A stretch of 64,000 bases of DNA from Mytilus trossulus (GCF_036588685.1 NC_086373.1:10044001-10108000), one strand, 5' to 3'; counted from the stretch's first letter, positions 15,076-47,427 are shown. The notes: a model not told the origin generated them from the letters alone. Numbers and translations: made by a program.

Positions 15076-18000
15076 TGCGGGGTTCACACATTGCCGATTA
15101 TTGCTCCCGTTTGAGATCGGACCGCGATACGACACGAAAAGTGAAAAAGTCGGATAAGTATCCTCAATTATCTGGACTGTCCTATTATTGTCTGGACGCA
15201 GTCGTTTTAGTTCGTAACAGATTCCTACTGGTCGGGAAGGGTCCGAATAGTTCGGCAAAGCACCCCGATAGTTAGGTGCGTCTCGTAACATTCGGGTAAA
15301 CTCAGCCGATTTTGTCTAGTCGGATTACAATCGTGTCTATGTCGTGACAGATTCTGCTGTATCGGATCGAATTCCTAACAAAGTTCTGTGTATTCGGGAT
15401 GGTGTCCTGTGTAACGGGTATGATCTGGAGAAATTTTTCATTGCTGTTTTTCTGCCGATTGAGTGCAGATTGCATCCAAGTCTTGTCGATTGCGAACCTT
15501 TTTTGCCGAAACCGTTCCGAAACAGTTTCGTTATTAATTCTAAATTCAACAATGATACCCACGTCAGAGTCCCGACAATTATACAGAATACAATACGACT
15601 GAGACCAGACAAAGCCGTTTGCAATACGATAAGATTTACCACTTCGTACCCAACATAGCTTAGATATTGATGAAATAACGGAGGATGAGATTAAGGACAT
15701 ACTCAAATCTTTGGAAATTGGTAAAGCATCCGGTGAAGATTGTATTAGTCATCAAATCCTGAGATATACTGCTAATAGTGTGTGTGTACCTTTATCATTT
15801 ATATTTAATTGTTCAATGAGAACTTCCAAATTTCCAAGTTGCTGGAAAGATGGTAATGTTTTAGCTTTTTTTTAAAAAGGGGATAAATCGATGGTTTCAA
15901 ACTATCGTCCTATTGCATTGTTACGTTGTGTGGGTAAAGTTTTTGAAAGAATAGTTTATAAACATATTTTTAATTTCATTTTTGAACTCAAGCTATTGTA
16001 TAAATTCCAGTCAGGTTTCGTTCCTGGTCATTCAACATTTCATCAAATGATTGAGATTTATCACAGAATTTGTTTAGCTATGGAAGATAAAGAAATTATG
16101 TGTATGATTTTTTGTGATATATCGAATGCTTTTGACCGACTTTGGCATAAAGGTCTATTAGAAAAAATCAAAACTTATGGCATAAAAGGCAACTTATTGG
16201 GTTGGATTGAAAATAATAGGAGACAGAAAGAACTTCTAAAAAATTCTGAATCTGCATTTGGAACATTAAAAGCAGGTGTGCCCCAAGGCTCAGTGCTTGG
16301 GCCTTTATTATTTCTGATGTTTATAAATGATATAGCAGATGAAATTCAATGTTTAGTTAAGACTTTTTGCCGATGATAGTTCACTCATGTATTCTTCGAA
16401 TAATGCTTTAGATATAGAAAGGAGATTAAATGAGGTTCTACAAACATTAAATGATTGGTCAAAACAATGGCTTGTAGATTTTAATCCTCAGAAAACAGAA
16501 TATATGGTTTTTACCGTAAGTATTCACAGCCTATTTATTTGAAATTTAATGGAGAATTGATTAAAAAGGTTGATGACCATAAACATTTGGTGTTACTGTT
16601 TCTAATAATTGCAAGTGGTCAGTACATACAGATAACACTTGCTGTAGTGCCACTAAACAAATTTTTGTTCTGAGAAAATTGAAATATATTCTCAACAGAA
16701 ACAATCTTAATAAGATATATCTTGCATACATACTTCCACTTTTAAAATATGCATGCGAGCTATGGGATGGATGTTGTGTTGAGATTCTGAAAAAATTGAG
16801 CGCTTGCAGTTTGAGGCAGCCAGAATTATAACTGGGCTTCCGCAATTTGCAAGTATAGAATCCCTCCTTTTTGAAACTGGATGGGAAACTTTGAGTTCTA
16901 GAAGAAATAGACGCAAATTATGTTCATTTCATAAAATACACAGCAATAATGTTCCAGAATATCTTATGGATTGTATCTCGAATTATACAGATGATAATAA
17001 TTATAATACTAGAAACCGTTCTCACTATAGAGTACCGAGATGTAGATTGGACATATTTCCCTTCTTCAATTCGAGCATGAAATTTATTACCATTAGATAT
17101 AAGATCCATACAAATTATCATCTTCAAATTTCAAAAACACCATCCGGAGAAATGATATTTCATTTTTTGTACCTAAATATTATTTCATTGGAAACAGGAT
17201 GGAAAATATACTACATACAAAATTACGACACAGATGTAGTCCTTTAAAAGCTGATTTATACAGAGTTAATTTAGTAAATGACCCAAGTTGTGAATGTGGG
17301 TGTCCGTTATAAGATTCAATTCATTTTTTCTTAGAATGTCCACTCTACATAAACTTTAGAAATCAGCTCTTTAAAAGCATTCAACACTTAGCTGATATAT
17401 CCCTAGAACATATTTTATTTGGAACAGACGAAATAACTGTTGAACAAAACACAATCCTTTTCAGAAATGTACATAGTTATATACGCCATACAAAAAGATT
17501 CTTTGATTAATATTGCTGTATCTTAAAATGTACTCGTATCCAAATGTTATACTGTTTAAACATAATATAAAATTGTATATATTTTTCATATTGTACTGAA
17601 ATATATATAAATTGCTGCAATCTTGAAATTTTGTATATTGTACTTATATGGAGAGGATTATCTTAAGTTGTTATAACTTGTATCCAATCCTATTGTATAT
17701 TTAGACAATACAATATGTTTAAACTAATACGATAGAGCGGACCGTGATAGGATTACGTCCCGACAGTACCTGATCATCCCGAGTATGCCGACTGTTTTCG
17801 AACGGATAACTTCCGTCAGCGTCGGTTCACTGTCTTGTCACTATCTGATCTGATTACATTCGGTAGAATCGGGACGCAGTCGTGACAGACTCGGTCGAAT
17901 TTTACCTGGCGAAAGATACAATTCGGATTAGAAGCGGATTATCGGGATAAATTCGCTGAAAACGTTGAATATCGACGCTTCCTGAACAATATCTGATTGT

Positions 18001-23497: not shown

Positions 23498-25530
23498 TTA
23501 TGTCTGTGGTTGATAAGTATGTTGCTGTTGCTGTTGTTGCTGTTGTTGAATAATTTGTTGTGACACAGGTATCTGTATACGTTTCTGCATTTCATTTTGA
23601 TGGCTCATATTAAGTGGAGCATTACCTGCATATGCTGATGACTGAATAGGAACCATAGTAGGGGGTCCCCCTTCTATCTGAGCTATAACACCACCTTGGG
23701 CAGTGGTCGGTAGATTCTCTAAAAATCTTAAAGTCTCCATGTATCCTAATAGTGTGGAAAATGTCTGAGATTGTTGTCTATTATCATTTGTCTGCACAAC
23801 GGTTGGTCGATTGGTCTGGTCACGGTTCACTTGGTATTCAGCCGGTATGACACCATTTGTTCTAATCATATCTAAATTAACATCTTTGTTTATAATTTGT
23901 TGTTGTGCCGGTTGCTGTTGGTTTGTTAGGTACATTGTGCCATGTGTTTGCACCTGATGTTGTCGGTACTCGTTAGTTTGGGCGTTTGGATCCATAGCTT
24001 GCTGTTGGTGACGTATGGCACCCCCACTGACATCTATGTATCTCTGATCTGTTAACTGCATCTGTGATCCAATAGAAGTTACCTGCATACTTTGCATTTG
24101 AGCAGGTATGTGTTGCTGTTGATGTATGTTCTGCATGTTTGACATATTAATCACTGACTGAGCATTATTTTCATACAATTGAATAGGAACAGCTAATTCA
24201 CGTCCATCAGCTGTTTGCATGGTATGATAAATGCTATTAATGTTTGGTTGTGATGTGACCAGCACTGTTGGGTCTTCCCTGGGAATATTAAGAGCTTGAA
24301 ACACTGCAGCACTAACTTTTTCATACTCCTTCAGTTTTTCCTTCCTCTCCCCTCTAGGTGCTCTAGGAGGTTTATTAGCATTGTCTCCACTATGAGATGA
24401 TCTCAAATGACGAGTCAGGTGATCCTTACGTCCAAATCTCTGTGGACAGTATTGACATAGAAAGTCTTTTTTCTTTGTATGTGTAATCATGTGTCTTCTC
24501 ACATCTTTCCTTGTATAAAACTTCTTTCCACATTCAGGGCAAGCATGTATTTTTTCTGTACAATTTTTCACTGACCGGGCACCACTATGTACTTTCAAAT
24601 GATACAATAGTTCTTCCCTTGTCTCATGCTGCTTGTGACAGATTCCACACTCTGTAGACCTTCCTGCATCAGCATCGTGAAATGCCTTGTGAGTTCTGTA
24701 GGAAAAGTTGTAAGAATACTCCTTGCCACACTCTTCACACACCCATCTTTTCTTATTTGGGTCGTGAGTAATCATGTGATTTTTCAGGTGATCTTTACGA
24801 TTGAATGACTTGTCACAATAAGGACACTTGTGATGACGGGGACATGTATGAATCAAGCGATGTCTTTCTAATTTAAATTTGGACATAAATCCTTTAGAAC
24901 ATTCAGCTACTTCGCAAATAAATGGTTTGACTCCAGTATGGTCAGACACATGTATTACAAACAATGCTTCTTTTGTAAATGTTTCTGTGCAATGGGGACA
25001 TTGCATTGGTTCCCGTCTAGATGCCCTTGGTCCACGGGGAATCCTTCCTTTTTTACGACCACGTCTTCGTGGCATAGGTTCAGGATAATCTTCATCTGCT
25101 CCCAATATTTCATCTAACATTTCTGTAGTTGTCTTTTCCTCGTCTTCATCATCGTCCATGACTTGTTCCATGTATGCTTTATCTTCTGGTTCCCCATCTA
25201 GAGCCTGATCATCAGGCGTCTCCTCCACTTGTAGGGGTGGAGGAATGTCTAAGGCTGGTCGTTTATTCTTGGGTGGTCTCCCTCTCCGTCTTGGTGGAAG
25301 AGGCTGAGACTGTGAAGGGTCTACAACCTTAGCTTTTAACATTCTTGACTTCTCCAGTCTAGCTCTCCATGTTTTTGATGGTTTGATGTACTTTCTTGGC
25401 CTTCCTTTCCTGGGTCTACCTCTCAATCTACGACTGTCGGGTGGTAGTCCTGGACACAAGTGGGCTTCTAGATCAGCAAAAGCACTGAAGCCATCATAGC
25501 ACACTGAACACACCCACTTGGCAGCCACAC
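23498..25530 (-). CDS. PLAG1-like: PR-PLAG exon 6: C2HC finger, AT-hooks, 7 PLAG-type C2H2 fingers, Q-rich tail
   Basis: SKFKLERH, RKDHLKNHMITHDPNK, FYTRKDVRRHM, KDFLCQYCPQRFGRKDHLTRH are near-identical to vertebrate PLAG1/PLAGL2 fingers as recalled; RGRP motifs; ttacag| acceptor phase 1. Confidence 0.95.
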
Positions 25531-26147
25531 CTGTAATGAAAAATATTATTCCCTTAATAAAGACAACAAATTTTATAACAGTATTTGAATCTTATACATT
25601 TTAAAGAATGGTAGTTCACTTTTGCCTAACTTAACAACTGTGGTCTATTTCTAAAATGTAAGTTTAATAAGCCTTCCATAAGCAGCAAGTGGAGTTGATC
25701 TATTTTTAAGAATGTCTCTCAAGGTTCTTCATTTTAACTTTTATGCATATATATGGTAAATTTTGATAAACCTGACTTAGCACATGCAATTCTTAGTTGC
25801 TTTTTGAAAGTGACTTTTGATGCCATGACCTCAGAATCAATAGAAAGTTTCATCATTATATGTGACCACACGTTCAAGTAAACTTAAACTGTTAAAATTC
25901 CATCGTAGTATTAGATTTTGCACCTAGAAACAAATTGTCATTTCAGTCTGTTTAAATTACTAAGACCTTGACATTGAAAAAGTGACCTCAAAATCTTTCA
26001 GTGATTCTGCTGGCACTGGTCATTTACAAAAGGTTTCTAAAATGACGAAACTATTTCAAATCAATTTTGTCACTTAAATATGGAAAGACTTTCCCTTGAA
26101 AATACTATTATTTAGAGATTAATATTAAGCCACTATACCATGTTTAC

Positions 26148-26271
26148 CTGTAGCTTCCTGATCAGGTGTCTCTGTGATGATAGGTTCTGGATCAGACAGA
26201 AGTGGTTTGTCCATCGTCTCGGCATACTCAGCAGAATACCAAACTTTTATCTCAGTGTTAGAAGGAATTGG
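26148..26271 (-). CDS. PLAG1-like: PR-PLAG exon 5: PR/SET C-terminal motif
   Basis: PIPSNTEIKVWYSAEYAETMDK (ELxVWY motif); catag| and |gtaaac; 124 nt, phase 0-1. Confidence 0.92.
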
Positions 26272-26983
26272 CTATGTCAAAGAAAAAATAAATATGTATT
26301 ACTTAAAATACTGAAATTTTATTTTACCTACCACTTTTTTGTATCAAAGAGAAGTTCCAAAAGTTCCAATATAAATCATACTACCTGTGTCCTGGAACAT
26401 CATGACATGTTGCTTTTTTCAAAATTTTAATTTGTTTTACACCTGTGTATTGAAAAGATACCAGTACGATATGAATGTTTGAGGTGAAATGCAACGACAC
26501 AAAATTAACTTACAATTAGGCACACTTATATATCAACTTCGTCAATAAATCAATCTTATATTAACTTTGTCACACTATAATTACACAAATTTAATGTAGT
26601 CACATTTTAACTACACCACAATTAAATTAAGTTATTAAGTTACTTTATATATATATTGATTCCTGTATGTCAGACTAATAAAACAAATGGGTGATTTCCA
26701 TTAAAAGCTTTTCTACCAGTGCAATATATAACAACCCTCTGTTTCAGGATGCATGTAATCTTGATGTAATATCTGTGAATGGTGGCTGAAGTTTTGTTTT
26801 GTTTTACTTGATAAAGATTTTACCACTGCATCCAATAAAGAAGAGTTGCTGGAGTTTTTGGTGTGCACAGTACAGAATCAGAACTCTCAGAGTGTACTGT
26901 AAGCTCACATAGTCCTTCAGGGACACATGAACTAAAAAATATGTTAACATATGAATTCAGTAACAATTATTGCATGTACAAAC

Positions 26984-27136
26984 CTTTATAGATACAAAGA
27001 AAATATGCTCGTCTTGTTGATAAACAACAACATTTTGTTCAGCTGTATTTCTGGCAGGTCTAACAAACATCATCCAGTTACATTTATCTTCATCTGAGAT
27101 ATCAATATTATCAACATAGCCATCATCCTTAAATAT
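26984..27136 (-). CDS. PLAG1-like: PR-PLAG exon 4: PR/SET core
   Basis: IFKDDG...DISDEDKCNWMMFVRPARNTAEQNVVVYQQDEHIFFVSIK, the PRDM NWMxxV...EQN signature; 153 nt, phase 0-0. Confidence 0.95.
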
Positions 27137-27781
27137 CTGTAATTCAAAAGAGATATCAAATACACGTATTATCAACATAGCCATAATCCTTTAGGTGTAA
27201 TACCACCAAATCATGGTACATGTACGTCACATCAGTTGTATTTATGAAAATTGGTCGAAAAAAAATATTCCCTTGAATTTGACAGTTGTACATTGTAGGT
27301 AATTAATCCTACATTTTATTGCAGTAAAATATTTCTGTGTCATAAACATATGTCTTGGGTATTTCAAAGCACCATTAGTTTTTTATTTGGGGTTTCTATA
27401 GAAAAATTTGTAATCTCGAGTTACATGGTTCCTACTCTTGTACACAGGTCAAATAAGGGGGAGAAATTTGATTGGTTACCTTCCAGTGATGGTTATTTTC
27501 TTATATGCAATGAAATGTTATGTGAATTTTTTTCTATACAGTAGTCCTGGACAGGATAAAACTTTACTCATGCCAAGTATTTCTTTAATCATTTAATAAT
27601 TTGAAACAAAAATAAATTCTGCACACTTTTTTGAAAAGTGCAAAGTTAACAAAGACTAATATGGTGGTATTACAAAAAATGAACACTTTATAAAATATGT
27701 GCATCTGAAGCGGTTTTCATGCACACATTTTTAGTGTTAAATTCGTCAGGAAGGCTCAAACGTAAACATTTCAAAGCTTAA

Positions 27782-28560
27782 GGATGTATTCTTCTGACTT
27801 TTCCGTCTCGTTCAGTCTCGTTGAAATCTCGTTCTTGAATTATTTCCAAAACGTGTGATACAAGTGGAAAATATCAATGAATTTTAAAAATATTATTATC
27901 AAACATAACTCTGTGAAAAAATTATGTATTTACAATGAATGGTTTTTGAGTAATCCAGTTTTCATATTTTACGACCAATCAAGTCTGTATTTTTAGCCAA
28001 AATTTTGAGAAAATGGGTGAGGGATACAAAAAATGATTTTACAGGAATCATGTACATCCCATATCATTTTGGTCTTTTCAAATTTGTTAGATATGTATTT
28101 TTTCAATCATTTATAACAAAAAAGTTGAAATAATATGCATTTTGATCTTAAAACTGAGAAAAATCACAAAAATATAAAATTGACAGCATGGTAAAATTCA
28201 CACAAAAAAGCATCAAAATATGATAAAACTTTCTTATATTAACACCTACCTATAGTTTTTTTAAGTAAAATTTATTCAGATTGGTCCACTTCATCTTTGT
28301 AGAAAGTATGAAAAAAAGTTTAATTGTGGAACTGTGATTTTTTTCAGGATAATAGGCCAAAAATAGGTAAAAATCAATGAAAAAGGGGGAAATCATCAAA
28401 ATTGGGCATTTTCATAGGGCTGTAGCAAAAAAAAGAAGTGCACCACCATATGATTTTTTCTTCACCAATTATTTTGTTACAGTCTTATAAACCCAAAAAT
28501 CAGGTTAAGAAAAAAAGTTTAATTCTAGAAAAATTTTTGGCTCCTCAGAGGTGTACATCC
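27782..28560. mobile_element. Kolobok-like non-autonomous element
   Basis: TTAA at 27778-27781 and 28561-28564; TIRs ggatgta..ctga / tcag..tacatcc with GG...CC termini. Confidence 0.78.
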
Positions 28561-28943
28561 TTAAGATACATGAATGTAAATATGCTACAAGGTTAGAAGC
28601 TATACATGTATGACCAACAAGAATTCAAGTGCTCAACTTGTTGTTTCAAACAAAACATCACTTCAAGTTCAATTTAGGCTGTAATTGATCATGAGTGGTA
28701 GCGGTTTGCTGCACAGTTTAACATATTTGTTTCTCTTTCATAATAATAAATTATGTTATAAATTTTGTTCCTAAGTTAATTTATATGACCACTATCTTAG
28801 GTCTAACATGAATTTGAAGTGGTATTTAAGCACCATTGTTTCAACAACTTGAACCTGTTGACAAAATGATGATTCGTATATGTTAATGCAGAAAAATGTA
28901 TTAAAACTTAACCTCAATCTCGTAAGTTAATCTAGTTCTTTAC

Positions 28944-29977
28944 CTTAATCTCGTATGTATAATCTAGTTCTTTTTCTTCTGTTTCTTTTTCCTTTTCATC
29001 TGTCTGTTTTGTAACTTCTGTGGCAAGTGGCTCATCAATGGCATTAGTTTGTGGCCGCTGTTCTGATTCACTAGTTAGTACTGTGGGTAAAGGTTCAGTT
29101 GAGGCAAGAACAGTGTTTTGTTGTAATGACTCAGTAGTATTATGTTGCATGTGATCAGTTGAAGGTAGAGTAGTATTCTCCAGTGAAGAGAGCGACATAC
29201 TACTTGGTGGTAAAGGTTGCTGATCAGAAGTCATATTCTGAAGTTCCTGTGTGGCTACAGCTATCTGGTGCTCTAAGAGCTGTGTTTCTGTTAATCCTTC
29301 ATTGACGTAACTATCAGCTGGTGTTATTCCAGCCTCTATTGAAGCTTGCAATGTTAAGTCTTGTGACAATTGTGGCTGTTCAAACTGACTGGCAGCTGTA
29401 TCTCCAGACAATGTTGTCACTATATCTAACGCCTGCTGTGGAGTATAGCCACCAGATAGATGTTGAAGTCCCGCATCACCGTAAGGACCAGCATGTAAAC
29501 AGTTCTGGATATTCATTATCTGTGTAGCCTTGTCAATGTTAGGATGTTGAAGTGTAAAAGTATTGTTGTTTTGTTGTGAATATTGCTGAGATACTAACTG
29601 TTGTTGTATATTAGCAGTATCAAACCCATCAATGTTTTGTAACAATAAATGTCCATCGTCATTGTGTGGGATCATTTCAGAACTGTTAATATGTTGTTGT
29701 TGTTGCTGGGTTTCAATGCTTAATTGTCTTTGAATGTCAGCTTCTTGCTGCTGAGAATTTTGAGGAATATTTTGTGGAATTTGGTTAGTTATTTCTGGCT
29801 CAATAAGTTGAACACTGGGTGCTCCTTCCTCAATGGTTTCCTTTGGTGGTTTTTCATCTCCCCTTACATCTGTAGTCTCTTTCTTTGGAGTATGTTTTTC
29901 TGTAGATTTAACTTGTCCATAGAGAGGTCCAAACTGGGATCTGCATTGTATTATTCTTTTAGCAAAGATACCATAAG
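28944..29977 (-). CDS. PLAG1-like: PR-PLAG exon 3: PR/SET N-half plus long Q/T/E-rich insert
   Basis: SYGIFAKRIIQCRSQFGPLYG (SET-N motif) then ~320 aa low-complexity sequence to YEIK|gtaaag; 1034 nt, phase 1-0. Confidence 0.88.
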
Positions 29978-30087
29978 CTGTAAAACAAAAGTATTGAAAT
30001 GCAAAATAAATCAAAACAAAAGTTCATCAATATGTATCAATGCAGTCAAATCTATGTATGAACTTTTCTGTTTACCAGATGTTCCAC

Positions 30088-30322
30088 GTATTAGCAACAC
30101 AAACCACATACAATTTACAGAACTACTTTCAGACAGTAACCTGTAGCTGCTAGTGTCTTTTCATTGTATTAGCAACACAAACCACAAACAATTTACAGAA
30201 CTACTTTCGGACAGTCACCTGTAGCTGCTAGTGTCTTTTCATTGTATTAGCAACACAAACCAAAAACAATTTACAGAACTACTTTCAGACAGTCACTTGT
30301 AACTGCTGGTGTCTGTTCATTG
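30088..30322. repeat. 78-bp minisatellite, 3 copies
   Basis: gtattagcaacac recurs at 30088, 30166 and 30244. Confidence 0.95.
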
Positions 30323-30544
30323 TTTAGTCTCTGGTTTGACAGCTCTTTTCTCATTGGCAATCCTACCACAACATTAAATTTTATAAAGATGACAAATTTA
30401 TTTTCTGTCGGTTCCTACTGCACACCTCCAGTGAAATCCTTAAATACAAAACAGAATTTTCACTGAATTGTGTTATTAATTTAACAGTTACGATGGTTAC
30501 TTTTTAAAGTACCTTTTCATGCACAATAACAATGATATACTCAC

Positions 30545-30697
30545 ATGTTTTACCATCTTCCGTCTTCACCTGCTTAATAACAAGACCAGCTGGGCATGTA
30601 AGTCTTGCCCTTGATGGTATGGCATTATCAAAAACTTGTGTAAAACCACCATGTTTCTTACATATACCTGGTACACTCTTCCCACAGTCATGGCACC
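30545..30697 (-). CDS. PLAG1-like: PR-PLAG exon 2: PR zinc knuckle
   Basis: (W)CHDCGKSVPGICKKHG...DNAIPSRARLTCP matches the PRDM4/10/15 knuckle pattern WCxxC-x6-CxxHG...SRAR; ag/gt boundaries, 153 nt, phase 1-1. Confidence 0.9.
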
Positions 30698-31470
30698 CTA
30701 TTAAAAAAAGGAAATAAGTATAAACATCTTCTCTTTACCTTGTCTCATTGTAACTGTTTTAGTCCTTAAATATATACATTGTGTAATGCATGGATATCTT
30801 AATGAATAGAGAAATTTTCAGATTGATCATATACATGTACTACTCACACTACTAGTCATATACTAGACTATTGTTTTTTTTTTTTTTTTTATTGTCTTTT
30901 CAATGTCTTAGATTGTACTATTTTCCATGTGATAAAACATCTTCTTCCAAAGGTGTATTACTATAGTCATGATAGTGTAATGTTTAGATAAGTATTTTTT
31001 TTAATCATGATTTTTTTTTCATTTTTTTTGTCATACTCTGTGTCTCAGTGTACAAGATAGAATACCTGAATAAAGATCTATATCAGAAGATTAAACAACA
31101 CCTATACATGTATACTATTGTGCCTAGTTTCTCAAAAAAAAATTGAAAATTGATGGCTTTTTACATGATGACTTTATGTTTCAGGTATGTTTCAGGTCTC
31201 ATACATGTAATACTAATCATGCTAATAGCAGCACATTGCTTGCAATTGTAATCTTCATGGTTCAGCTCTCATTTCTAAATTATTTATTTTGCTGAAATGT
31301 CTAGATCTATTGCATTCCATTCAAGGCCTAAATATGTCTTAATCATAGTCAACCCATTTAAAGATTTTGAAGCACTTATTTCTTGTAATGATCACCAACT
31401 TGTGGGAGGGTTGTATCATGATAAAAATATTTTTTTTTTAGGGTTGGTCTATTTTTTTATTTAAATATAT

Positions 31471-31684
31471 GAGGCTCCCACAGGGTACCCCCCTCAGGTC
31501 GCAAGGTCGCTTTTAAATTTGTCGAGAGGTCGTTTTTAAGGGAAATGTACAGGTCGGAGGTCATTTTTCTCAACACAGAGGACGTAAGTCGTTCGGAGGT
31601 CGTTTTTAGAAGGCCCTCAGGTCGGAAGTCGCCTCTCAAAAGCCCAGCTAGGTCGCAGGTCGTTTTTGACCTTGCGGGAGCCTC
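31471..31684. mobile_element. Sola-like MITE
   Basis: TIRs gaggctcccacagggt / accttgcgggagcctc; ATAT on both flanks; internal AGGTCG repeats. Confidence 0.75.
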
Positions 31685-31725
31685 ATATATTCTACTTTCT
31701 TCAGTCCTTTTTTTGTTTTACTTAC

Positions 31726-31753
31726 ACAACTCATCTTGTTTGTGGGATGACAT
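31726..31753 (-). CDS. PLAG1-like: PR/SET-domain PLAG-family zinc-finger protein, coding exon 1 of 6
   Basis: gccATG TCA...MSSHKQDEL-T|gtaagt; phase 1 T joins GG of the next exon to give the conserved W of W-C-x-x-C; polypyrimidine acceptor at ~31783. Confidence 0.75.
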
Positions 31754-32204: not shown

Positions 32205-32805
32205 TTGTTAACCAAGGAGCCTGTTTTGTTATTTATTCCATGCGTTTCAGTTTTAGGATAAGTTTTTGATGGTCCACTTTATCAAACGCTTTTGAAAACT
32301 CCATAACAACTACGTCAGTTTGTTTACTGTTTGCCATATAAACATGGTAAATGTTCGAAGTTGTGTTTCACAGCTACATGTAACTTTTGATCTAAAACCA
32401 TGCTGCAGTGGGTATAGTAAATCGTGAATGTCTAGATGTTTCATTATGGATGATACAATTATATATGTTCTAGTGATTTACTTAGAATACAGGTTAGAGA
32501 GATGGGCCTGTAGTTTTTAGGTTTAGATTTTGCTCCCTTTTGAAAACTGGTGTAACCAAGTCCTTTCTCCAGTCCTTTGGTACGGTGCCTGTATTTACTG
32601 ATGAATTAAACAAGTCAGATATTATAGGTGAGATTTTATGATGAACTTCTTTTTAAAAATGAGGCGATATTTTGTCTGGACCAATTGCTTTTGATGGGTT
32701 TAAATTATTTAGTAATTTAAATGTTCCTTCTGGGGTGATGTTTATTTGCTTCATTTCAAATTTATGTGTTGCTGATTTTAATGATTTTAGTTCATGTGAA
32801 AATCA
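32205..32805 (-). mobile_element. Decayed CR1-type LINE RT fragment
   Basis: LNPSKAIGPDKI, VPKDW, NYRPISLTC, QHGFR, FSKAFDKVDH with stops and frameshifts. Confidence 0.85.
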
Positions 32806-33897: not shown

Positions 33898-34080
33898 ATG
33901 CCAGAAACTTCCTCAGATGATTTGGACCAAAAACATAAGAGTGCGAGTGAGATAGTTGAAGAACGACGAAAAAAAACAATCGAAGAAAAGAGGAAAAGGG
34001 TGAATGAGATTGTAGAAGAAAATAGAAAGAGAGTGGTCAAAGAAAAATTGGAAGCTGTACTAAGACATCCATGCAATCGT
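33898..34080 (+). CDS. CHCHD7: CHCHD7/COX23 homolog, exon 1 of 3
   Basis: MPETSS...LRHPCNR|gtaaga; 61 codons, phase 0; supplies the first Cys of the twin CX9C motif. Confidence 0.88.
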
Positions 34081-37847: not shown

Positions 37848-37946
37848 GAAAAAGAAATGTCATATCAGTGTTTAGAAGATAATGGTTATGATAGAGGTAG
37901 ATGTCAAATGTATTTTGAAAATTACAGAAACTGTTCCAAGTTTTGG
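37848..37946 (+). CDS. CHCHD7: CHCHD7/COX23 homolog, exon 2
   Basis: ttttag|EKEMSYQCLEDNGYDRGRCQMYFENYRNCSKFW; completes CX9C-X10-CX9C; resembles human CHCHD7 CLDENNYDRERC..YF..YKNCRRFW as recalled; donor is gcaagt. Confidence 0.92.
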
Positions 37947-38436
37947 GCAAGTATTTTAATCAAAACAGTTTTGTTTAAGTTAATTATGCAATTTTATTTT
38001 GAATTACATGTGTATTAAATATTTAACTTATTCAGTCATTATATACATCATTGTACATGTATGTAAAGTTGATTTTTTATCAAGCATCACCAAATTCTAA
38101 CATGTTGAATTGTTTTCAAGAATGATTGCGCTTCATTACTTATATGAAATGAGGAGATGTGGTATGATTGCAAAAGACACAACAACATGTATCCACTAAA
38201 GTCCAAATGATGTGGATTTACACATCTATAGGTCATCATACAGCGATACAGCTTTTAACAGTAACCAAAAGCCATATTGTAAAGTCAACAATAAACGGTT
38301 CTGATATTTGTTTGAACTATCACTTAAGATTTATTGATCTTGAAAAACTATATATCATCAGCTACATTAACAAGGAACATTGGTCAATTACTCCCCTTTA
38401 ATGATGACACATTTGAGAAGAAATGAGGTTAAGTTG

Positions 38437-39649: not shown

Positions 39650-42600
39650 CCAATGAGGAGAAGTTGTTTCTACATCTCCCTCAAATCCCAGCCAAAATTT
39701 GCATTACTGTGAGATGTTGTTTTACACATCACTCACAGTTCCCAACCAAAATGATTTCAATTACTGTGAGAAGGGGTTCTTTCAATATCTCCTCCAGTTA
39801 CAAGCCAATATTACTTTTATTATTGTGAGTGAATGTTAATTCCACATTGATTTACTACTGTGAGTAGAGGTTGTCTTAACATCTCCAACTGTTCCTGGAC
39901 AAATGATTTCCCTTCATGTGAGTATTGTTTGCCACTGTTCCCAACTATGATAACGTTCACTACTGTGCGTAGATTCTTTTCTCATCTGCCACTGTTCCCA
40001 GCCAAAATGCTTTCCTTTTCTGATTATCGAGTTTGTTTTCACATCTGCCACAGTTCGCAGCCATAATGCTTTCTGTAACTTAGGGTAGAGGTTGATCGAT
40101 TTCACTGTTCCTAGTAATAGTGATTTCAATTACTCTAAGTAGAGGTTGTTTTCAGTTACTGTGAGTAGAGGTTGGTTTCCCGTCTGCCACTGTTCCCAGC
40201 CAGAATGCTTTCTTTTCTTGTGAGAAGAGTTTGTTTTCCCATCCGCCACTGTAACTAGTAAAGATGATTTCAGTTACTGTGAGTAGAGGTTGCTTCCAGT
40301 TATTGAGATTTGAGGTGGTTTCATCATCTGCCACTGTTCCCAGCCAAAATGCTTTCTTTTCTTGTGAGAAGAGTTTGTTTTCACATCTGCCACAGTTCGC
40401 AGCCATAATGCTTTCTGTAACTTAGAGTAGAGGTTGATCGATTTCACTGTTCCTAGTAATAGTGATTTCAATTACTCTAAGTAGAAGTTGTTTTCAGTTA
40501 CTGTGAGTAGAGGTTGGTTTCCTGTCTGCCACTGTTCCCAGCCAGAATGCTTTCTTTTCTTGTGAGAAGAGTTTGTTTTCCCATCTGCCACTGTTACTAG
40601 TAAAGATGATTTCAGTTACTGTGAGTAGAGGTTGCTTCCAGTTATTGAGAGTTGAGGTGGTTTCATCATCTGCCACTGTTCCCAGCCAAAATGCTTTCTT
40701 TTCTTGTGAGAAGAGTTTGTTTTCCCATCTGCCACCTGTTAGTAGTAAAGATGATTTCAGTTACTGTGAGTAGAGATTGCTTCCAGTTATTGGGAGTATT
40801 CCACACATCCTTCGTATTCTAGCCAAGATGATTTCAATAACTATGACCAGAGGTTGTTTCCACACATCCTACGTATTCTAGCCAAGATTTTTTCCATAAC
40901 TATGACCAGAGGTTGTTTCCACACATCCTACTGTACATGTACGTATTGCAACCAAGATGATTTTCATTACTATGACCAGAGGTTGTTTCTACACATCCTA
41001 CGTATTCTAGCCAAGATGATTTCCATTACTATAACCAGAGGTTGTTTCCACACATCCTACGTATTCTAGCCAAGATAATTTCCACTACTATGACCAGAGG
41101 TTGTTTCCACACATCCTACGTATTGCAACCAAGATGATTTCCATTACTATGACCAGAGGTTGTTTCTACACATCCTACGTATTCTAGCCAAGAGGATTTC
41201 CATTACTATAATCAGAGGTTGTTTTCACACATCCTACGTATTCTAGCCAAGATAATTTCCACTACTATGACCAGAGGTTGTTTCCACACATCCTACGTAT
41301 TCTAGCCAAGATAATTTCCATAACTATGACCAGAGGTTGTTTCTACACATCCTACGTATTCTAGCCAAGATGATTTCCATAACTATGACCAGAGATTGTT
41401 TCCACGCATCCTACGTATTACATGACTCCATAACTATGACCAGAGGTTGTTTCTACACATCCTATGTATTATAGTCAAGATGATTTCCACTACTATGACC
41501 AGAGGTTGTTTCCACACATCCTACGTATTCTTGCCAAGATAATTTCCATTACTATGACCAGAGGTTGTTTCTACACATTCTACGTATCCTAGCCAAGCTG
41601 ATTCACATTACTATGACCAGAGGTTGTTTCCACACATCCTACGTATTAAAGCCAAGATGATTTCCATAACTATGACCAGAGATTGTTTCCACTCATCCTA
41701 CGTATTACATGACACCATACCTATGACCAGAGGTTGTTTCTACACATCCTATGTATTATAGCCAAGATGATTTCCACTACTATGACCAGAGGTTGTTTCC
41801 ACACATCCTACGTATTCTTGCCAAGATAATTTCCATTACTATGACCAGAGGTTGTTTCTACACATCCTACGTATCCTAGCCAAGCTGATTCACATTACTA
41901 TGACCAGAGGTTGTTTCCACACATCCTACGTAGTATAGCCAAGATGATTTCCATAACTATGACCAGAGATTGTTTCCACTCATCCTACGTATTACATGAC
42001 TCCATAACTATGACCAGAGGTTGTTTCTACACATCCTATGTATTCTAGCCAAGATGATTTCCACTACTATGACCAGAGGTTGTTTCCACACATCCTACGT
42101 ATTCTTGCCAAGATGATTTCCATTACTATGACCAGAGGTTGTTTCTACACATCCTACGTATCCTAGCCAAGCTGATTCACATTACTATGACCAGATATTG
42201 TTTCTACACATCCTACGTATTCTAGCCAAGATGATTTCCATAACTATGGCCAGAGGTTGTTTCTACACATCTTACGTATTTTTGCCAAGATGAATTCCAT
42301 TACTATGATCAGAGGTTGTTTCCACACATTCTACGTATTCTAGCCAATATGATTTCTATAACTATGACCAGAAGTTGTTTCTACACATCCTACGTATTCT
42401 AGCCAAGATGATTTCCATAACTATGACCAGAGGTTGTTTCTACACATCCTACGTATTCTAGCCAAGATGATATCCATAACTATGACCAGAGGTTGTTTCC
42501 ACACATCCCATGTATTCTAGCCAAGATGATTTCCATAACTATGACCAGAAGTTGTTTCTACACATCCTACGTATTCTAGCCAAGATGATATCCATAACTA

Positions 42601-45030
42601 TGACCAGAGGTTGTTTCCACACATCCTACGTATTCTAGCCAAGATGATTGATTCTACACATCCTACGTATTCTAGCTAAGATGATTGATTCTACACATCC
42701 TACGTATTCTAGCCAAGATGATTGATTCTACACATCCTACGTATTCTAGCCAAGATGATGTCCATTACTATGACCAGAGGTTGTTTCCACACATCCTACG
42801 TATTCTAGCCAAGATGATTTCCATAACTTTGACCAGAAGTTGTTTCCACACATCCTACGTATTCTAGCCAAGATGATGTCCATTACTTTGACCAGAGGTT
42901 GTTTCCACACATCCTACGTATTCTAGCCAAGATGATTGATTCTACACATCCTACGTATTCTAGCTAAGATGATTGATTCTACACATCCTACGTATTCTAG
43001 CCAAGATGATTGATTCTACACATCCTACGTATTCTAGCCAAGATGATGTCCATTACTATGACCAGAGGTTGTTTCCACACATCCTACGTATTCTAGCCAA
43101 GATGATTTCCATAACTTTGACCAGAAGTTGTTTCCACACATCCTACGTATTCTAGCCAAGATGATGTCCATTACTTTGACCAGAGGTTGTTTCCACACAT
43201 CCTACGTATTCTAGCCAAGATGATTGATTCTACACATCCTACGTATTCTAGCTAAGATGATGTCCATTACTATGACCAGAGGTTGTTTCCACACATCCTA
43301 CGTACTCTAGCCAAGATGATTTCCATAACTATGACCAGAAGTTGTTTCTACACATCCTACGTATTCTAGCCAAGATGATATCCATAACTATGACCAGAGG
43401 TTGTTTCCACACATCCTACGTATTCTAGCCAAGATGATTGATTCTACACATCCTACGTATTCTAGCTAAGATGATTGATTCTACACATCCTACGTATTCT
43501 AGCCAAGATGATTGATTCTACACATCCTACGTATTCTAGCCAAGATGATGTCCATTACTATGACCAGAGGTTGTTTCCACACATCCTACGTATTCTAGCC
43601 GAGATGATGTCCATTACTATGACCAGAGGTTGTTTCCACACATCCTACGTATTCTAGCCAAGATGATGTCCATTACTATGACCAGTGGTTGTTTCCACAC
43701 ATCCTACGTATTCTAGCCAAGATGATTTCCATAACTTTGACCAGAAGTTGTTTCCACACATCCTACGTATTCTAGCCAAGATGATTTCCATAACTTTGAC
43801 CAGAAGTTGTTTCCACACATCCTACGTATTCTAGCCAAGATGATGTCCATTACTTTGTCCAGAGGTTGTTTCCACACATCCTACGTATTCTAGCCAAGAT
43901 GATTGATTCTACACATCCTACGTATTCTAGCCAAGACGATGTCCATTACTATGACCAGAGGTTGTTTCCACACATCCTACGTACTCTAGCCAAGATGATG
44001 TCCATTACTATGACCCGAGGTTGTTTTCACACATCCTACGTATTCTAGCCAAGATGATTTCCATAACTTTGACTAGAAGTTGTTTCCAAACATTCTACGT
44101 ATTCAATCTAAAATTCTTTCCATTACCTGAACCAGAGGTTTTTTTCTCACCTCCAACATAGAGTGAATAATTAGTTGTAAGGTAATTTCACTATCCTCAC
44201 ATTTTCCCATCCAATATTATTGTAACCAGAAGTTGTTTCTACATTTCGCACTGATGGCCATTATGCCAAGTCAGAATGATTACCATTACTGAAAAGTAAA
44301 TCAATGGAAGTTGTTTCGCCATTTCCAACGATCCCCGTCCAAAATTATTTATATTGCTGTGATCACAGTTTGTTACCACACCCCATCTTACCAGCAAAGG
44401 CGAATTAGTATGAAAAAGAGGTTGTTGCCACACCTCTCACTGTTTCCAGACAAGTTTTAATATGAACAGACGTTTCTTCCACATTTCCCACTGTTCCTAG
44501 CAAAGATGATATCTATTACTGTGACCAGAGATTGTTTCCACATCTTCCACTGCCTAAAGCCAATGTGATGTCTATTACTGTGCAATTGTTGTTTCTACAT
44601 TTCCCTCTAGTCCCAGTTAAAATGATCCCCAATACTGTATTGGAAATAGTTTCGTCATTTACACCTATTACCGTACAAAATCATTTCTATTGTAACCAGA
44701 GGTTGTTTCAACCAGAGGCGGATTTAGGGGGGGGGGGGGCCGGGCCCCCCCCCCCTTTTTGGGAAAAAAATTGGTTGCTTATATAGGGAATCACTGAAGT
44801 GGGCCCCCTCTTATGTCAGTCAGTGGGCCCCCACTTATGAAAATTCCTGGATCCGCCACTGGTTTCAACACACCTTCTTCACCGCCAATGTAATTTATGT
44901 TACATGGATCAGAAGATGATTTCATATATCCCACTGTTGCAATCCAAATTGATATATTTATTAATGTGGGCGGCGGTTGCTTCCACGTCGTCCTACAGTG
45001 TCAAGCCGAAATGTGACCAGAAGTTGTATT
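39650..45030. repeat. 59-bp satellite array in CHCHD7 intron 2; homogeneous core ~40800-44110, diverged flanks
   Basis: Monomer ttccacacatcctacgtattctagccaagatgatttccattactatgaccagaggttgt, with 51-bp and 37-bp deletion variants. Confidence 0.95.
44713..44861. mobile_element. hAT-type MITE with 8-bp TSD
   Basis: cagaggcggat / atccgccactg TIRs; GTTTCAAC at 44705-44712 and 44862-44869. Confidence 0.9.
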
Positions 45031-47313: not shown

Positions 47314-47427
47314 AATAGTGTAAGCTGGGAAAGATTGTTCAGAGGCATTAAACCTTCAATTCCTCCTCCGGATGAAAGAGATGCTATTAGAGAAGAATTT
47401 GCAAAAAGAAAAGGCTATAATTACTGA
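47314..47427 (+). CDS. CHCHD7: CHCHD7/COX23 homolog, exon 3; total 131 aa
   Basis: ctttacag|NSVSWERLFRGIKPSIPPPDERDAIREEFAKRKGYNY*; matches the CHCHD7 tail pattern NS...R..G.KP..P...ERD.I. Confidence 0.9.
   Translation, partial: NSVSWERLFRGIKPSIPPPDERDAIREEFAKRKGYNY

What the first reader, a model, noticed from the sequence alone, without database searches (positions are those of the whole stretch)
23498..31753. PLAG zinc-finger array fused to a PRDM10/15-type zinc knuckle and PR/SET domain
Seen: six exons with compatible phases (1,1,0,0,1) give one ~1174-aa frame: knuckle, PR/SET, C2HC finger, AT-hooks, seven PLAG fingers, Q-rich tail. Known: vertebrate PLAG1, PLAGL1 and PLAGL2 have no PR domain, and PR-less isoforms of PRDM genes are often the oncogenic forms. 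Inference: PLAG genes are PRDM-family members that lost the PR exons in vertebrates. The CHCHD7 linkage supports orthology independently. I cannot check whether this has been published.
Basis: partly seen in the sequence, partly recalled or inferred. Interest (0 to 1): 0.88.

Follow-up and report, generated by a model that had tools for sequence, protein, structure and literature searches.

The report
Mussel PLAG gene keeps PR domain
The mussel's only PLAG-type zinc-finger gene really does carry an N-terminal PR/SET domain, and the same layout occurs across bilaterian animals and in PLAGL1 of sharks, turtles, crocodilians and birds, so the PLAG growth-control and tumour genes descend from a PRDM-type gene and lost that domain several times.

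Summary
Six minus-strand exons (31753 to 23498) give an open 1174-codon frame, identical to the NCBI model LOC134714823 isoform X2 of Mytilus trossulus. Spliced contigs from four public runs join exons 2-6 at exactly the predicted sites.

The protein has a zinc knuckle and a PR domain split by a roughly 306-aa disordered insert. A C2HC finger, AT-hooks, seven PLAG-type fingers and a Q-rich tail follow.

It is the only PLAG-type finger array in this genome. In a finger tree it sits as pro-orthologue of PLAG1, PLAGL1 and PLAGL2. CHCHD7 lies head-to-head about 2 kb away, as at human PLAG1.

PR+PLAG proteins occur in molluscs, brachiopods, arthropods, echinoderms, hemichordates, amphioxus and lamprey. 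They also include proteins named PLAGL1 in sharks, turtles, crocodilians and birds. Only PLAG1, PLAGL2, mammalian PLAGL1 and salamander PLAGL1 models lack the domain, which means at least three losses.

The PR domain and finger array are collinear with PRDM10, but the gene is not the mussel PRDM10 orthologue.

I found no paper linking PLAG with PR domains; database names for the orthologues are inconsistent.

The scan's other notes (s1-823878, s1-823494) are on this same window, not other DNA.

The parts
31726..31753 (-). Coding part of exon 1: ATG at 31753, nine codons plus one base, donor GTAAGT (phase 1)
   Evidence: sequence. The N-terminus MSSHKQDEL equals that of P0001. The joint to exon 2 was not directly observed.
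30545..30697 (-). Exon 2: zinc knuckle C-x2-C-x8-C-x2-H (30651-30695) and the first PR strands; phase 1 in and out
   Evidence: Joint 29977|30545 seen in four runs. AF2 pLDDT is 66-93 for aa 10-93. The knuckle Pfam model PF18445 hits the crayfish orthologue but not the mussel exon.
29880..29977 (-). Exon 3, first part: N-terminal half of the PR domain (to about aa 93)
   Evidence: PF21549 profile positions 14-50. F76, G77 and P78 are invariant in 23 orthologues.
28962..29879 (-). Exon 3, rest: insert of about 306 aa, rich in Q, T and E, inside the PR domain (aa 94-399); kept in the mRNA
   Evidence: Contigs cover 28944-29977 without a joint. AF2 pLDDT is below 50. Four of the five non-synonymous differences listed lie here. 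The insert occurs only in bivalves, judged by knuckle-to-NWM spacing.
26984..27136 (-). Exon 4: PR core with the CNWMMFVRPA motif
   Evidence: PF21549 E 3.6e-17, positions 50-100. Best solved relatives are PRDM10 (E 4.5e-12) and PRDM4 (E 2e-10).
26148..26271 (-). Exon 5: end of the PR domain (EIKVWY); an alternative donor 9 nt further on (26139) gives isoform X1 with three extra residues (KHG)
25454..25510 (-). C2HC linker finger (aa 505-523) at the start of exon 6
   Evidence: C505, C508 and C523 are invariant in orthologues. It aligns with the first finger after the PR domain of PRDM10. pLDDT is about 80.
25268..25423 (-). Basic linker with three RGRP-type AT-hook cores (aa 534-544 and 580-585)
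   Evidence: The cores are canonical in bivalves only; other phyla have a basic stretch here.
24392..25000 (-). Seven C2H2 fingers collinear with PLAG1, PLAGL1 and PLAGL2
   Evidence: The helices of fingers 3, 6 and 7 are identical to the mammalian ones. pLDDT is 70-92.
23498..24391 (-). Q-rich C-terminal tail and stop codon; one short conserved helix at aa 1089-1101 (23720-23758)
   Evidence: L1092 is nearly invariant.
33898..34080 (+). Candidate first coding exon of CHCHD7 (tentative): ends HPCNR followed by GTAAGA, which completes a C-x9-C with the next exon
   Evidence: This is inference from motif spacing only.
37848..37946 (+). CHCHD7 exon with the twin Cx9C core; probable GC-AG intron after it
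   Evidence: Best solved match is human CHCHD7 2lqt, E 1.3e-9, residues 20-54. Pfam CHCH E 1.1e-4. Sequence.
47314..47427 (+). Last CHCHD7 exon (..GIKPSIPPPDERDAIREEF..) and stop
   Evidence: The resemblance to the human CHCHD7 C-terminus is judged from memory. The end coordinate agrees with the scan note s1-823494.

Best explanation
This is one real, expressed gene of Mytilus trossulus. It encodes a sequence-specific transcription factor that keeps the ancestral architecture of the PLAG family: zinc knuckle, PR/SET domain, C2HC finger, basic linker, seven PLAG fingers and an activation tail. It is the single-copy pro-orthologue of vertebrate PLAG1, PLAGL1 and PLAGL2.

Shown: the exon structure and splicing; the domain content; single copy in this genome; placement in the finger and PR trees; the same architecture in many phyla and in non-mammalian PLAGL1; the divergent CHCHD7 neighbour.

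Inferred mechanism: fingers 6-7 and finger 3 have recognition helices identical to those of mammalian PLAG proteins. They should therefore bind a GC-rich bipartite site of the GRGGC...GGG type. In bivalves the AT-hooks would add minor-groove contacts. The Q-rich tail would activate transcription. The knuckle plus PR module would act as a second effector or cofactor-binding surface, as the N-terminal PR region does in PRDM10, rather than as a proven methyltransferase. The roughly 306-aa bivalve insert would be a disordered loop that leaves the PR fold intact.

Evolutionary reading: PLAG is an unnamed PRDM subfamily, a whole-gene paralogue of PRDM10/15. It lost the PR exons on the PLAG1+PLAGL2 stem and again in mammalian PLAGL1.
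For: Gene model and identity to the NCBI protein. Spliced contigs joining exons 2-6 in four runs from at least three studies.

PR domain: PF21549 is collinear over three exons and scores E 3.9e-31 on P0001. The AF2 model folds both halves confidently with a disordered insert. The C-terminal half superposes on PRDM10 3ihx at 0.6-2.4 A.

Fingers: 42-48% identity over about 240 aa to PLAG1, PLAGL1 and PLAGL2, with the helices of fingers 3, 6 and 7 identical. The best named vertebrate hits are all PLAG family. There is only one such array in the genome; the next best match is 37% identical.

Finger tree: protostomes, then ambulacrarians, then amphioxus (97/87), then vertebrates (92/86). Tetrapod PLAGL1, including PR-bearing sauropsids and PR-less mammals, forms one clade at 99/97. 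PLAG1+PLAGL2 form one at 97/96. The PR tree is congruent.

PR present in sauropsid and shark PLAGL1. At least three losses, single loss rejected.

Collinearity with PRDM10 through knuckle, PR, the finger after PR and the finger array, including the unusual RKDFLC linker. Separate PRDM10-like PR exons elsewhere in the genome.

CHCHD7 is divergent, with about 2.1 kb between the putative start codons. Human CHCHD7 and PLAG1 lie head-to-head 500 bp apart (PMC9405559). The PRDM10 PR region contributes to activation (PMC7368010). PLAGL1 binds GC-rich sites (PMC5737700).

Of 18 listed exonic differences, 13 are synonymous. None of the 5 non-synonymous ones falls in a folded domain.
Against: The runs are labelled 'RNA? 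(a guess)' and are contigs, so transcript ends, strand and PR-less isoforms cannot be judged. The exon 1 joint was not observed.

The split between the PR-PLAG and PRDM10 PR domains has weak support (74/93). PRDM15 and PRDM4 were not in the tree. The grouping of the shark PR-bearing gene with tetrapod PLAGL1 is moderate (87/81).

Absence of PR in salamander models may be incomplete annotation; they keep the linker finger. The sauropsid and shark proteins are predictions. One duck protein sequence of 774 aa is also on record in Logan assemblies.

No binding, activity or expression data exist for the mussel protein. Whether the PR domain binds SAM was not tested. The knuckle Pfam model does not reach significance on the mussel sequence. 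No cnidarian member was seen, so the age beyond Bilateria is open.
Confidence: 0.85

Rival explanations
1. Two neighbouring genes, a PRDM10-like gene and a PLAG gene, are wrongly merged into one model, by read-through or by an annotation chimera.
For: Bird genome annotations did split the orthologue into a 'PRD15/PRDM10 partial' piece (212 aa) and a 'PLAL1 partial' piece (474 aa). Many insect models lack the PR part.
Against: Spliced contigs in four runs join exon 5 to exon 6 at an in-phase GT-AG intron, and a single contig spans exons 2-6. The ORF is open throughout. The same order, including the C2HC linker finger, is kept from mussel to alligator.
Confidence: 0.02
2. The gene is simply the mussel PRDM10/15 (or PRDM4) orthologue, and its fingers only resemble PLAG by chance or convergence.
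For: The PR domain is nearest to PRDM10, then PRDM4. NCBI names several orthologues PRDM10, PRDM10-like or PRDM4-like.
Against: The genome has other CNWMMF-type PR exons. One of them (L011) matches PRDM10 better than this gene does: 72 against 48 bits. Seven fingers are collinear with PLAG and have identical recognition helices. The finger tree places the gene with PLAG with strong support. There is CHCHD7 synteny. A C-terminal LPRFHQAFQ motif is shared by amphioxus PR-PLAG and by shark PLAG1 and PLAGL2.
Confidence: 0.03
3. The PR+PLAG combination is not ancestral. It arose by separate exon-shuffling events in several lineages, so vertebrate PLAG genes never had a PR domain.
For: PR-less PLAG models are common in insects and in PLAG1 and PLAGL2. 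The basal PR-PLAG node in the PR tree is weak.
Against: The PR and finger trees are congruent. The chordate PR clade has 93/91 support and the vertebrate PLAGL1 PR clade 100/99. The linker finger and domain order are identical in protostomes and deuterostomes. PR-bearing sauropsid PLAGL1 groups with PR-less mammalian PLAGL1 at 99/97. Salamander PLAGL1 keeps the linker finger without the PR domain, which looks like an intermediate of loss.
Confidence: 0.05
4. On mechanism: the PR domain is an active lysine methyltransferase that writes a histone mark at PLAG sites, rather than a non-catalytic effector or docking module.
For: N425, W426 and W467 are invariant in 23 orthologues, and the Tyr of the EL.VWY motif (Y468) is nearly invariant. 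These are positions which, from general knowledge of SET/PR domains, line the cofactor and lysine channel. The fold is intact.
Against: No activity was tested. [quoted passage not shown] From general knowledge, most PRDM PR domains lack demonstrable activity. A 306-aa loop interrupts the domain in bivalves.
Confidence: 0.2

Closest known systems
Vertebrate PLAG family (PLAG1, PLAGL1/ZAC1/LOT1, PLAGL2) as described in mammals
   Same: Seven collinear C2H2 fingers at 42-45% identity, with identical recognition helices in fingers 3, 6 and 7. An activation tail follows. There is a head-to-head CHCHD7 neighbour, as at human PLAG1. The mussel gene is the unduplicated orthologue of all three.
   Different: The mussel protein has about 670 extra N-terminal residues: knuckle, PR domain, C2HC finger and AT-hooks. 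Mammalian proteins start a few residues before finger 1.
PLAGL1 of sharks, turtles, crocodilians and birds (predicted proteins of 648-800 aa)
   Same: Same complete architecture: knuckle, PR, C2HC finger, basic linker, seven fingers.
   Different: These have no insert in the PR domain and no canonical AT-hooks. They are one of three vertebrate paralogues. The C-terminus is of the PLAGL1 type (LPHFHHAFK) in sauropsids.
PRDM10 / PRDM15 (Prdm10/15 subfamily of Vervoort et al. 2015, PMC4760075)
   Same: Nearest PR domain: 34% identity over knuckle plus PR, with a shared CNWMMFVRPA core. There is a finger right after the PR domain, a partly alignable finger array with the same RKDFLC linker, and a Q-rich tail.
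   Different: It is a separate bilaterian paralogue. The mussel genome has its own PRDM10-like PR exons. PRDM10 has 10 fingers and a different binding specificity. The PR trees separate the two groups, though weakly.
PRDM4
   Same: Second-nearest PR domain, with the zinc knuckle in front (Pfam names that model after PRDM4).
   Different: Lower similarity. PRDM4 was not sampled in my trees. Some echinoderm orthologues of this gene are merely named PRDM4-like.
PR-plus / PR-minus products of PRDM2, MECOM and PRDM16 ('yin-yang' isoforms; general knowledge)
   Same: The same DNA-binding module exists with and without a PR domain.
   Different: Here the two states are fixed in different genes and lineages (PLAGL1 of sauropsids against PLAG1, PLAGL2 and mammalian PLAGL1), not isoforms of one gene. 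No PR-less mussel isoform was seen or excluded.

Membership tests
PRDM family (PR domain plus zinc fingers) | N-terminal PR subtype of the SET domain | tested here: met
   PF21549 E 3.9e-31 and SET PF00856 E 5.7e-5 on P0001. The match is collinear over exons 3-5. The fold matches PRDM10, PRDM4, PRDM1, PRDM11 and PRDM9 structures.
PRDM family (PR domain plus zinc fingers) | C2H2 zinc-finger array C-terminal to the PR domain in the same protein | tested here: met
   Seven fingers plus one C2HC finger in exon 6. They are joined to the PR exons in spliced contigs.
PRDM family (PR domain plus zinc fingers) | Lysine methyltransferase activity (held by only some members) | not testable with these tools
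   Conserved N425, W426, W467 and Y468 leave it open. Needs a biochemical assay.
PRDM10/15 subfamily (as orthologue) | PR domain groups inside the PRDM10/15 clade, and the gene is the genome's PRDM10/15 representative | tested here: not met
   The PR tree puts PRDM10 of lungfish, frog, gastropods and beetles apart from PR-PLAG, at weak support 74/93. Another mussel locus (L011) is closer to PRDM10.
PRDM4/10/15-type zinc knuckle | Zn knuckle (Pfam PF18445) directly before the PR domain | tested here: inconclusive
   A C-x2-C-x8-C-x2-H motif is present at aa 11-25 and W10 is invariant. PF18445 gives no hit on the mussel exon or on P0001. It hits the crayfish orthologue at E 5.4e-7 and is on record for locust and crayfish.
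PLAG family | Seven collinear C2H2 fingers with PLAG-specific helices (RKDHLKNH, TRKDVRRH, GRKDHLTRH) | tested here: met
   Alignment; invariant columns.
PLAG family | Fingers group with PLAG1, PLAGL1 and PLAGL2 in a tree that follows the species tree | tested here: met
   (45 sequences, IQ-TREE). Generic zinc-finger outgroups were not included. The next best array in the own genome is only 37% identical.
PLAG family | Conserved neighbourhood: CHCHD7 head-to-head (as at human PLAG1) | tested here: met
   CHCHD7 exons lie on the plus strand at 37848-37946 and 47314-47427, with a candidate first exon at 33898-34080. The human arrangement is from PMC9405559.
PLAG family | Binding to a GRGGC core plus G-cluster | not testable with these tools
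   Predicted from identical recognition helices. The PLAGL1 motifs are from PMC5737700.
PLAG family (mammalian textbook definition) | Protein begins at the finger array, with no other folded domain | tested here: not met
   The mussel protein has knuckle, PR and a C2HC finger upstream. So do non-mammalian PLAGL1 proteins. This shows the definition is too narrow rather than excluding the gene.

The most novel reading that the evidence does not exclude
PLAG is an unrecognised fifteenth PRDM subfamily, a whole-gene sister of PRDM10/15, and its PR domain is a functional, growth-restraining module. On this reading its loss turned a PR-plus regulator into PR-minus growth drivers. The loss happened once on the PLAG1+PLAGL2 stem and again in mammalian PLAGL1. 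That would replay the PR-plus/PR-minus 'yin-yang' of PRDM2, MECOM and PRDM16 at the level of whole genes. The mammalian loss of the PLAGL1 PR exons would belong to the promoter rewiring that preceded imprinting of the locus.
Probability: 0.2. Interest if true: 0.85.

Novelty: new variant of a known kind. Interest (0 to 1): 0.62.

Why it matters
PLAG1 and PLAGL2 are oncogenes and growth regulators. PLAGL1/ZAC1 is an imprinted growth suppressor. All three are described as finger-only proteins.

Three things follow if they descend from a PR-domain gene and PLAGL1 still carries that domain in birds, reptiles and sharks:

1. The PRDM family has an unnamed subfamily that the main evolutionary survey did not name.
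2. The effect of having or lacking a PR domain on a PLAG DNA-binding module becomes directly testable in chicken, turtle, amphioxus or mussel.
3. The history of the mammalian PLAGL1 locus gains a datable event, the loss of its PR exons before monotremes diverged.

The result also explains the chaotic database names for these orthologues: PLAG1, PLAGL1, PRDM10-like, PRDM4-like, PRDM9-like, PRD15 and 'uncharacterized'.

Tried and rejected

2. The supplementary tables and sequences of Vervoort et al. 2015 are not held. I could not see whether their Prdm10/15, Prdm4 or orphan sets contain PR-PLAG genes.

3. The library-wide HMMER search with amphioxus PR-PLAG was swamped by giant poly-zinc-finger proteins. 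It added only gastropod, scallop, zebra-mussel and sea-urchin orthologues and no cnidarian. A blank there means little.

4. Two PR plus poly-finger proteins from that list (frog P0329, catfish P0369) were checked and rejected as PR-PLAG members: about 28% identity and generic fingers.

5. Pfam's knuckle model gave no hit on the mussel sequence.

6. Foldseek on the whole 1174-aa model gave only local matches, because the insert splits the PR fold. I had no reference for a cut-out domain, so no domain-only fold or search was run.

7. PR-less mussel 'proteins' of 613 aa (P0003 cluster) are ORF calls on unspliced contigs, not isoform evidence.

8. No typed joined sequence was sent to any tool. Searches were done exon by exon by reference. 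For full-length work I used the database protein P0001, which reads the same as the model. The exons were joined only inside one script, to check the frame and classify variants.

9. No human or mammalian genomic DNA was used, so relics of PR exons upstream of mammalian PLAGL1 were not sought.

Full report
**What is in the window.** The window is chromosome-scale contig C1, 10,044,001-10,108,000, of a 1.3-Gb genome. An exact protein match identifies it as Mytilus trossulus.

On the minus strand, six open stretches with canonical AG/GT borders lie at these coordinates:
- 31753-31726
- 30697-30545
- 29977-28944
- 27136-26984
- 26271-26148
- 25530-23501

The intron phases are 1,1,0,0,1. The exons sum to 3522 nt, or 1174 codons, with no stop. 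A search with exon 6 returned P0001, 'uncharacterized protein LOC134714823 isoform X2 [Mytilus trossulus]'. It has 1174 aa and is 100% identical over exon 6. Its printed sequence reads the same as the exon translations from MSSHKQDEL to the end. Isoform X1 (1177 aa) differs only by three residues (KHG), from a donor 9 nt further on in exon 5.

**Transcripts.** I laid the contigs of four public runs on 25331-31330. The runs come from at least three studies and two organism codes. They give joints at 25530|26148, 26271|26984, 27136|28944 and 29977|30545, which are exactly the predicted borders, each with CT..AC ends on the plus strand.

Single contigs run through several exons: X2 record 13 (4228 nt) spans exons 2-6 and X1 record 1 (3260 nt) spans exons 3-6. 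Unique intron sequence has zero depth. The long exon 3 is covered without any joint, so the Q-rich stretch inside the PR domain is kept in the mRNA.

There are limits. The runs are only guessed to be RNA, and contigs cannot show transcript ends or rare isoforms. The exon 1 joint lay outside the 6000 letters allowed.

**Domains.** Pfam PRDM2_PR (PF21549) matches collinearly:
- positions 14-50 at the start of exon 3
- positions 50-100 in exon 4 (E 3.6e-17)
- positions 101-122 in exon 5

On P0001 the domain scores E 3.9e-31. Between the two halves lie about 306 residues (aa 94-399).

In an AlphaFold2 model built on 23 orthologues, aa 10-93 and 400-487 are confident (pLDDT 66-95). The insert scores below 50. 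The C2HC finger scores about 80 and the seven fingers 70-92. Foldseek superposes the C-terminal PR half on PRDM10 (3ihx, 0.6-2.4 A, 45-53% identity), PRDM4, PRDM1, PRDM11 and PRDM9.

The knuckle is visible as C-x2-C-x8-C-x2-H at aa 11-25. The Pfam knuckle model does not score on the mussel sequence but does on the crayfish orthologue. The insert is a bivalve feature. Knuckle-to-NWM spacing is 415 aa in Mytilus and 273 in Solemya, against about 108-111 in other phyla.

Among 18 listed exonic differences between the window and the contigs, 13 are synonymous. The 5 non-synonymous ones lie in the insert or in the linker after the PR domain.

**PLAG identity.** The best named vertebrate matches of exon 6 are all PLAG1, PLAGL2 or 'PLAG1-like'. 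The seven fingers align without rearrangement to mammalian PLAG1, PLAGL1 and avian PLAGL2 at 42-45% identity. The helices of finger 3 (RKDHLKNH), finger 6 (TRKDVRRH) and finger 7 (GRKDHLTRH) are identical. The genome holds only this one array; the next best match is 37% identical.

A 45-sequence maximum-likelihood tree of the finger region follows the species tree:
- protostomes, then ambulacrarians, then amphioxus (97/87), then vertebrates (92/86)
- within vertebrates, one branch holds lamprey plus the shark PR-bearing gene plus tetrapod PLAGL1
- that join has 87/81 support, and tetrapod PLAGL1 alone has 99/97
- the other branch is PLAG1+PLAGL2 (97/96)

The mussel gene is thus the unduplicated orthologue of all three vertebrate genes.

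**Where the architecture occurs.** Proteins with both PF21549 and the PLAG fingers were found in:
- other bivalves, gastropods and Lingula
- insects and crayfish
- crinoids, starfish, sea urchins and a hemichordate
- amphioxus, and a lamprey (partial model)

Several sharks also have such a protein, and they have ordinary PR-less PLAG1 and PLAGL2 on other contigs.

Unexpectedly, the knuckle and PR region of the shark protein is 72-81% identical to the N-termini of proteins that NCBI names PLAGL1 in ostrich, other birds, alligator and turtles. Alligator, duck and turtle PLAGL1 score E about 1e-38 on PF21549, whereas bat PLAGL1, shark PLAG1 and shark PLAGL2 score nothing. Sauropsid PLAGL1 ends in LPHFHHAFK and groups with PR-less mammalian PLAGL1 at 99/97.

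Platypus, marsupial and eutherian PLAGL1 start a few residues before finger 1. Salamander models keep the C2HC linker finger but no PR domain. On the finger tree, presence or absence of PR needs at least three changes. A topology with all PR-less genes together is rejected (AU p 0.0012).

**Relation to PRDM10/15.** Against solved structures the PR domain ranks as follows:
- PRDM10 first (99 bits with the amphioxus protein; 48 bits with mussel exon 4)
- then PRDM4
- then PRDM9, PRDM11 and PRDM1

Amphioxus PR-PLAG and lungfish PRDM10 are 34% identical through the knuckle, the PR domain and the finger right after it. Their finger arrays align at 29%, with the same unusual RKDFLC linker. This suggests whole-gene paralogy.

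The mussel gene is nevertheless not the PRDM10 orthologue. The genome has other PR exons with the CNWMMF core. One of them (L011) matches PRDM10 at 72 bits. In the PR tree, PRDM10 of lungfish, frog, gastropods and beetles stands apart from PR-PLAG. That split has only 74/93 support, and PRDM15 and PRDM4 were not sampled. Within PR-PLAG the PR tree agrees with the finger tree (chordates 93/91, vertebrate PLAGL1 100/99). That agreement argues against repeated domain capture.

**CHCHD7.** On the plus strand, 37848-37946 encodes a twin-Cx9C segment. Its best solved match is human CHCHD7 (2lqt, E 1.3e-9, residues 20-54). 47314-47427 encodes a C-terminus that, from memory, resembles that of human CHCHD7. 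A candidate first exon at 33898-34080 ends so as to complete the first C-x9-C (tentative).

The two genes are therefore divergent, with roughly 2.1 kb between the putative start codons. Human CHCHD7 and PLAG1 lie head-to-head 500 bp apart (PMC9405559).

**How it most likely works.** Shown: one mRNA, the domain set and its conservation.

Inferred:
- The protein is a sequence-specific transcription factor.
- Identical recognition helices predict the GC-rich PLAG-type site. PLAGL1 motifs of the G(g/a)GGC and G4N6G4 kind are reported in PMC5737700. The roles of fingers 6-7 and finger 3 are from my knowledge of the PLAG1 literature.
- The three RGRP cores would add AT-rich minor-groove contacts. 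They are canonical only in bivalves.
- The Q-rich tail would activate transcription.
- The knuckle plus PR module would be a second effector surface. In PRDM10 the PR-containing N-terminal part supports activation, and the authors call its biochemical function unknown (PMC7368010).

Catalysis is neither supported nor excluded. N425, W426 and W467 are invariant and Y468 is nearly invariant in 23 orthologues.

**Novelty.** The gene model and its orthologues are already in public databases. Their names clash: PLAG1, PLAG1-like, PLAGL1, PRDM10, PRDM10-like, PRDM4-like, PRDM9-like, PRD15 and 'uncharacterized'. Bird annotations even split the gene in two.

Full-text searches found no paper connecting PLAG genes with a PR/SET domain. 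The main survey of Prdm evolution defines 14 subfamilies and never mentions PLAG. A bivalve PRDM survey does not mention it either. The library covers open-access papers and bioRxiv only, so prior publication elsewhere cannot be excluded.

I rate this a new variant of a known kind: a PRDM-type architecture for a family known as finger-only.

**Earlier notes of this scan.** Two notes lie on this same window: the insert in the PR domain (s1-823878) and the PLAG-CHCHD7 arrangement (s1-823494). Both agree with what I tested.

Noticed in passing
window 40000-44500: A long array of near-identical units of about 290 bp lies inside the large CHCHD7 intron. Repeated ORF fragments such as ..HILRILAKMISITMTR.. 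appear on both strands. GC rises to 0.40 and GC skew is strongly negative.
   Followed up: no
window 27131-28730 and 30731-30930: Intronic stretches of the PR-PLAG gene are covered at depths of hundreds to thousands by many short, diverged contigs with irregular joints. They look like dispersed repeats or transposon fragments present in many transcripts.
   Followed up: no
window 32236-32802 (-) and 15810-16800 (+): Open stretches that look like reverse transcriptase (for example ..SGFVPGHST.. and ..FCDISNAFDRLWHKGLL..). One lies between the PR-PLAG and CHCHD7 start regions.
   Followed up: no
window 37947-37952: The CHCHD7 exon seems to end at a GC donor (TGG|GCAAGT). Homology to human CHCHD7 (..FW|NS..) fits a GC-AG intron better than the nearby GT.
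   Followed up: partly
window 26139-26148: Tandem donors 9 nt apart at the end of exon 5 give NCBI isoforms X2 (1174 aa) and X1 (1177 aa, with KHG added). The laid contigs show the X2 form.
   Followed up: yes
proteins P0433, P0435, P0436 against P0434, P0439 (birds): In many bird genome annotations the PLAGL1 orthologue is split into a 212-aa 'PRD15 / PRDM10 partial' protein and a 474-aa 'PLAL1 partial' protein. These fall in the same 90% cluster as joined RefSeq models of 771-777 aa.
   Followed up: partly
proteins P0156, P0158 (salamander PLAGL1): The models keep the post-PR linker and C2HC finger but have no PR domain. In Pleurodeles the finger has lost its second cysteine. This is a possible intermediate stage of N-terminal loss.
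   Followed up: partly
loci L010 (G000:C10:48.76 Mb) and L011 (G000:C6:78.78 Mb): Two further mussel PR exons carry the CNWMMF core. L011 is PRDM10-like. L010 is ambiguous between PRDM10 and PRDM4.
   Followed up: partly
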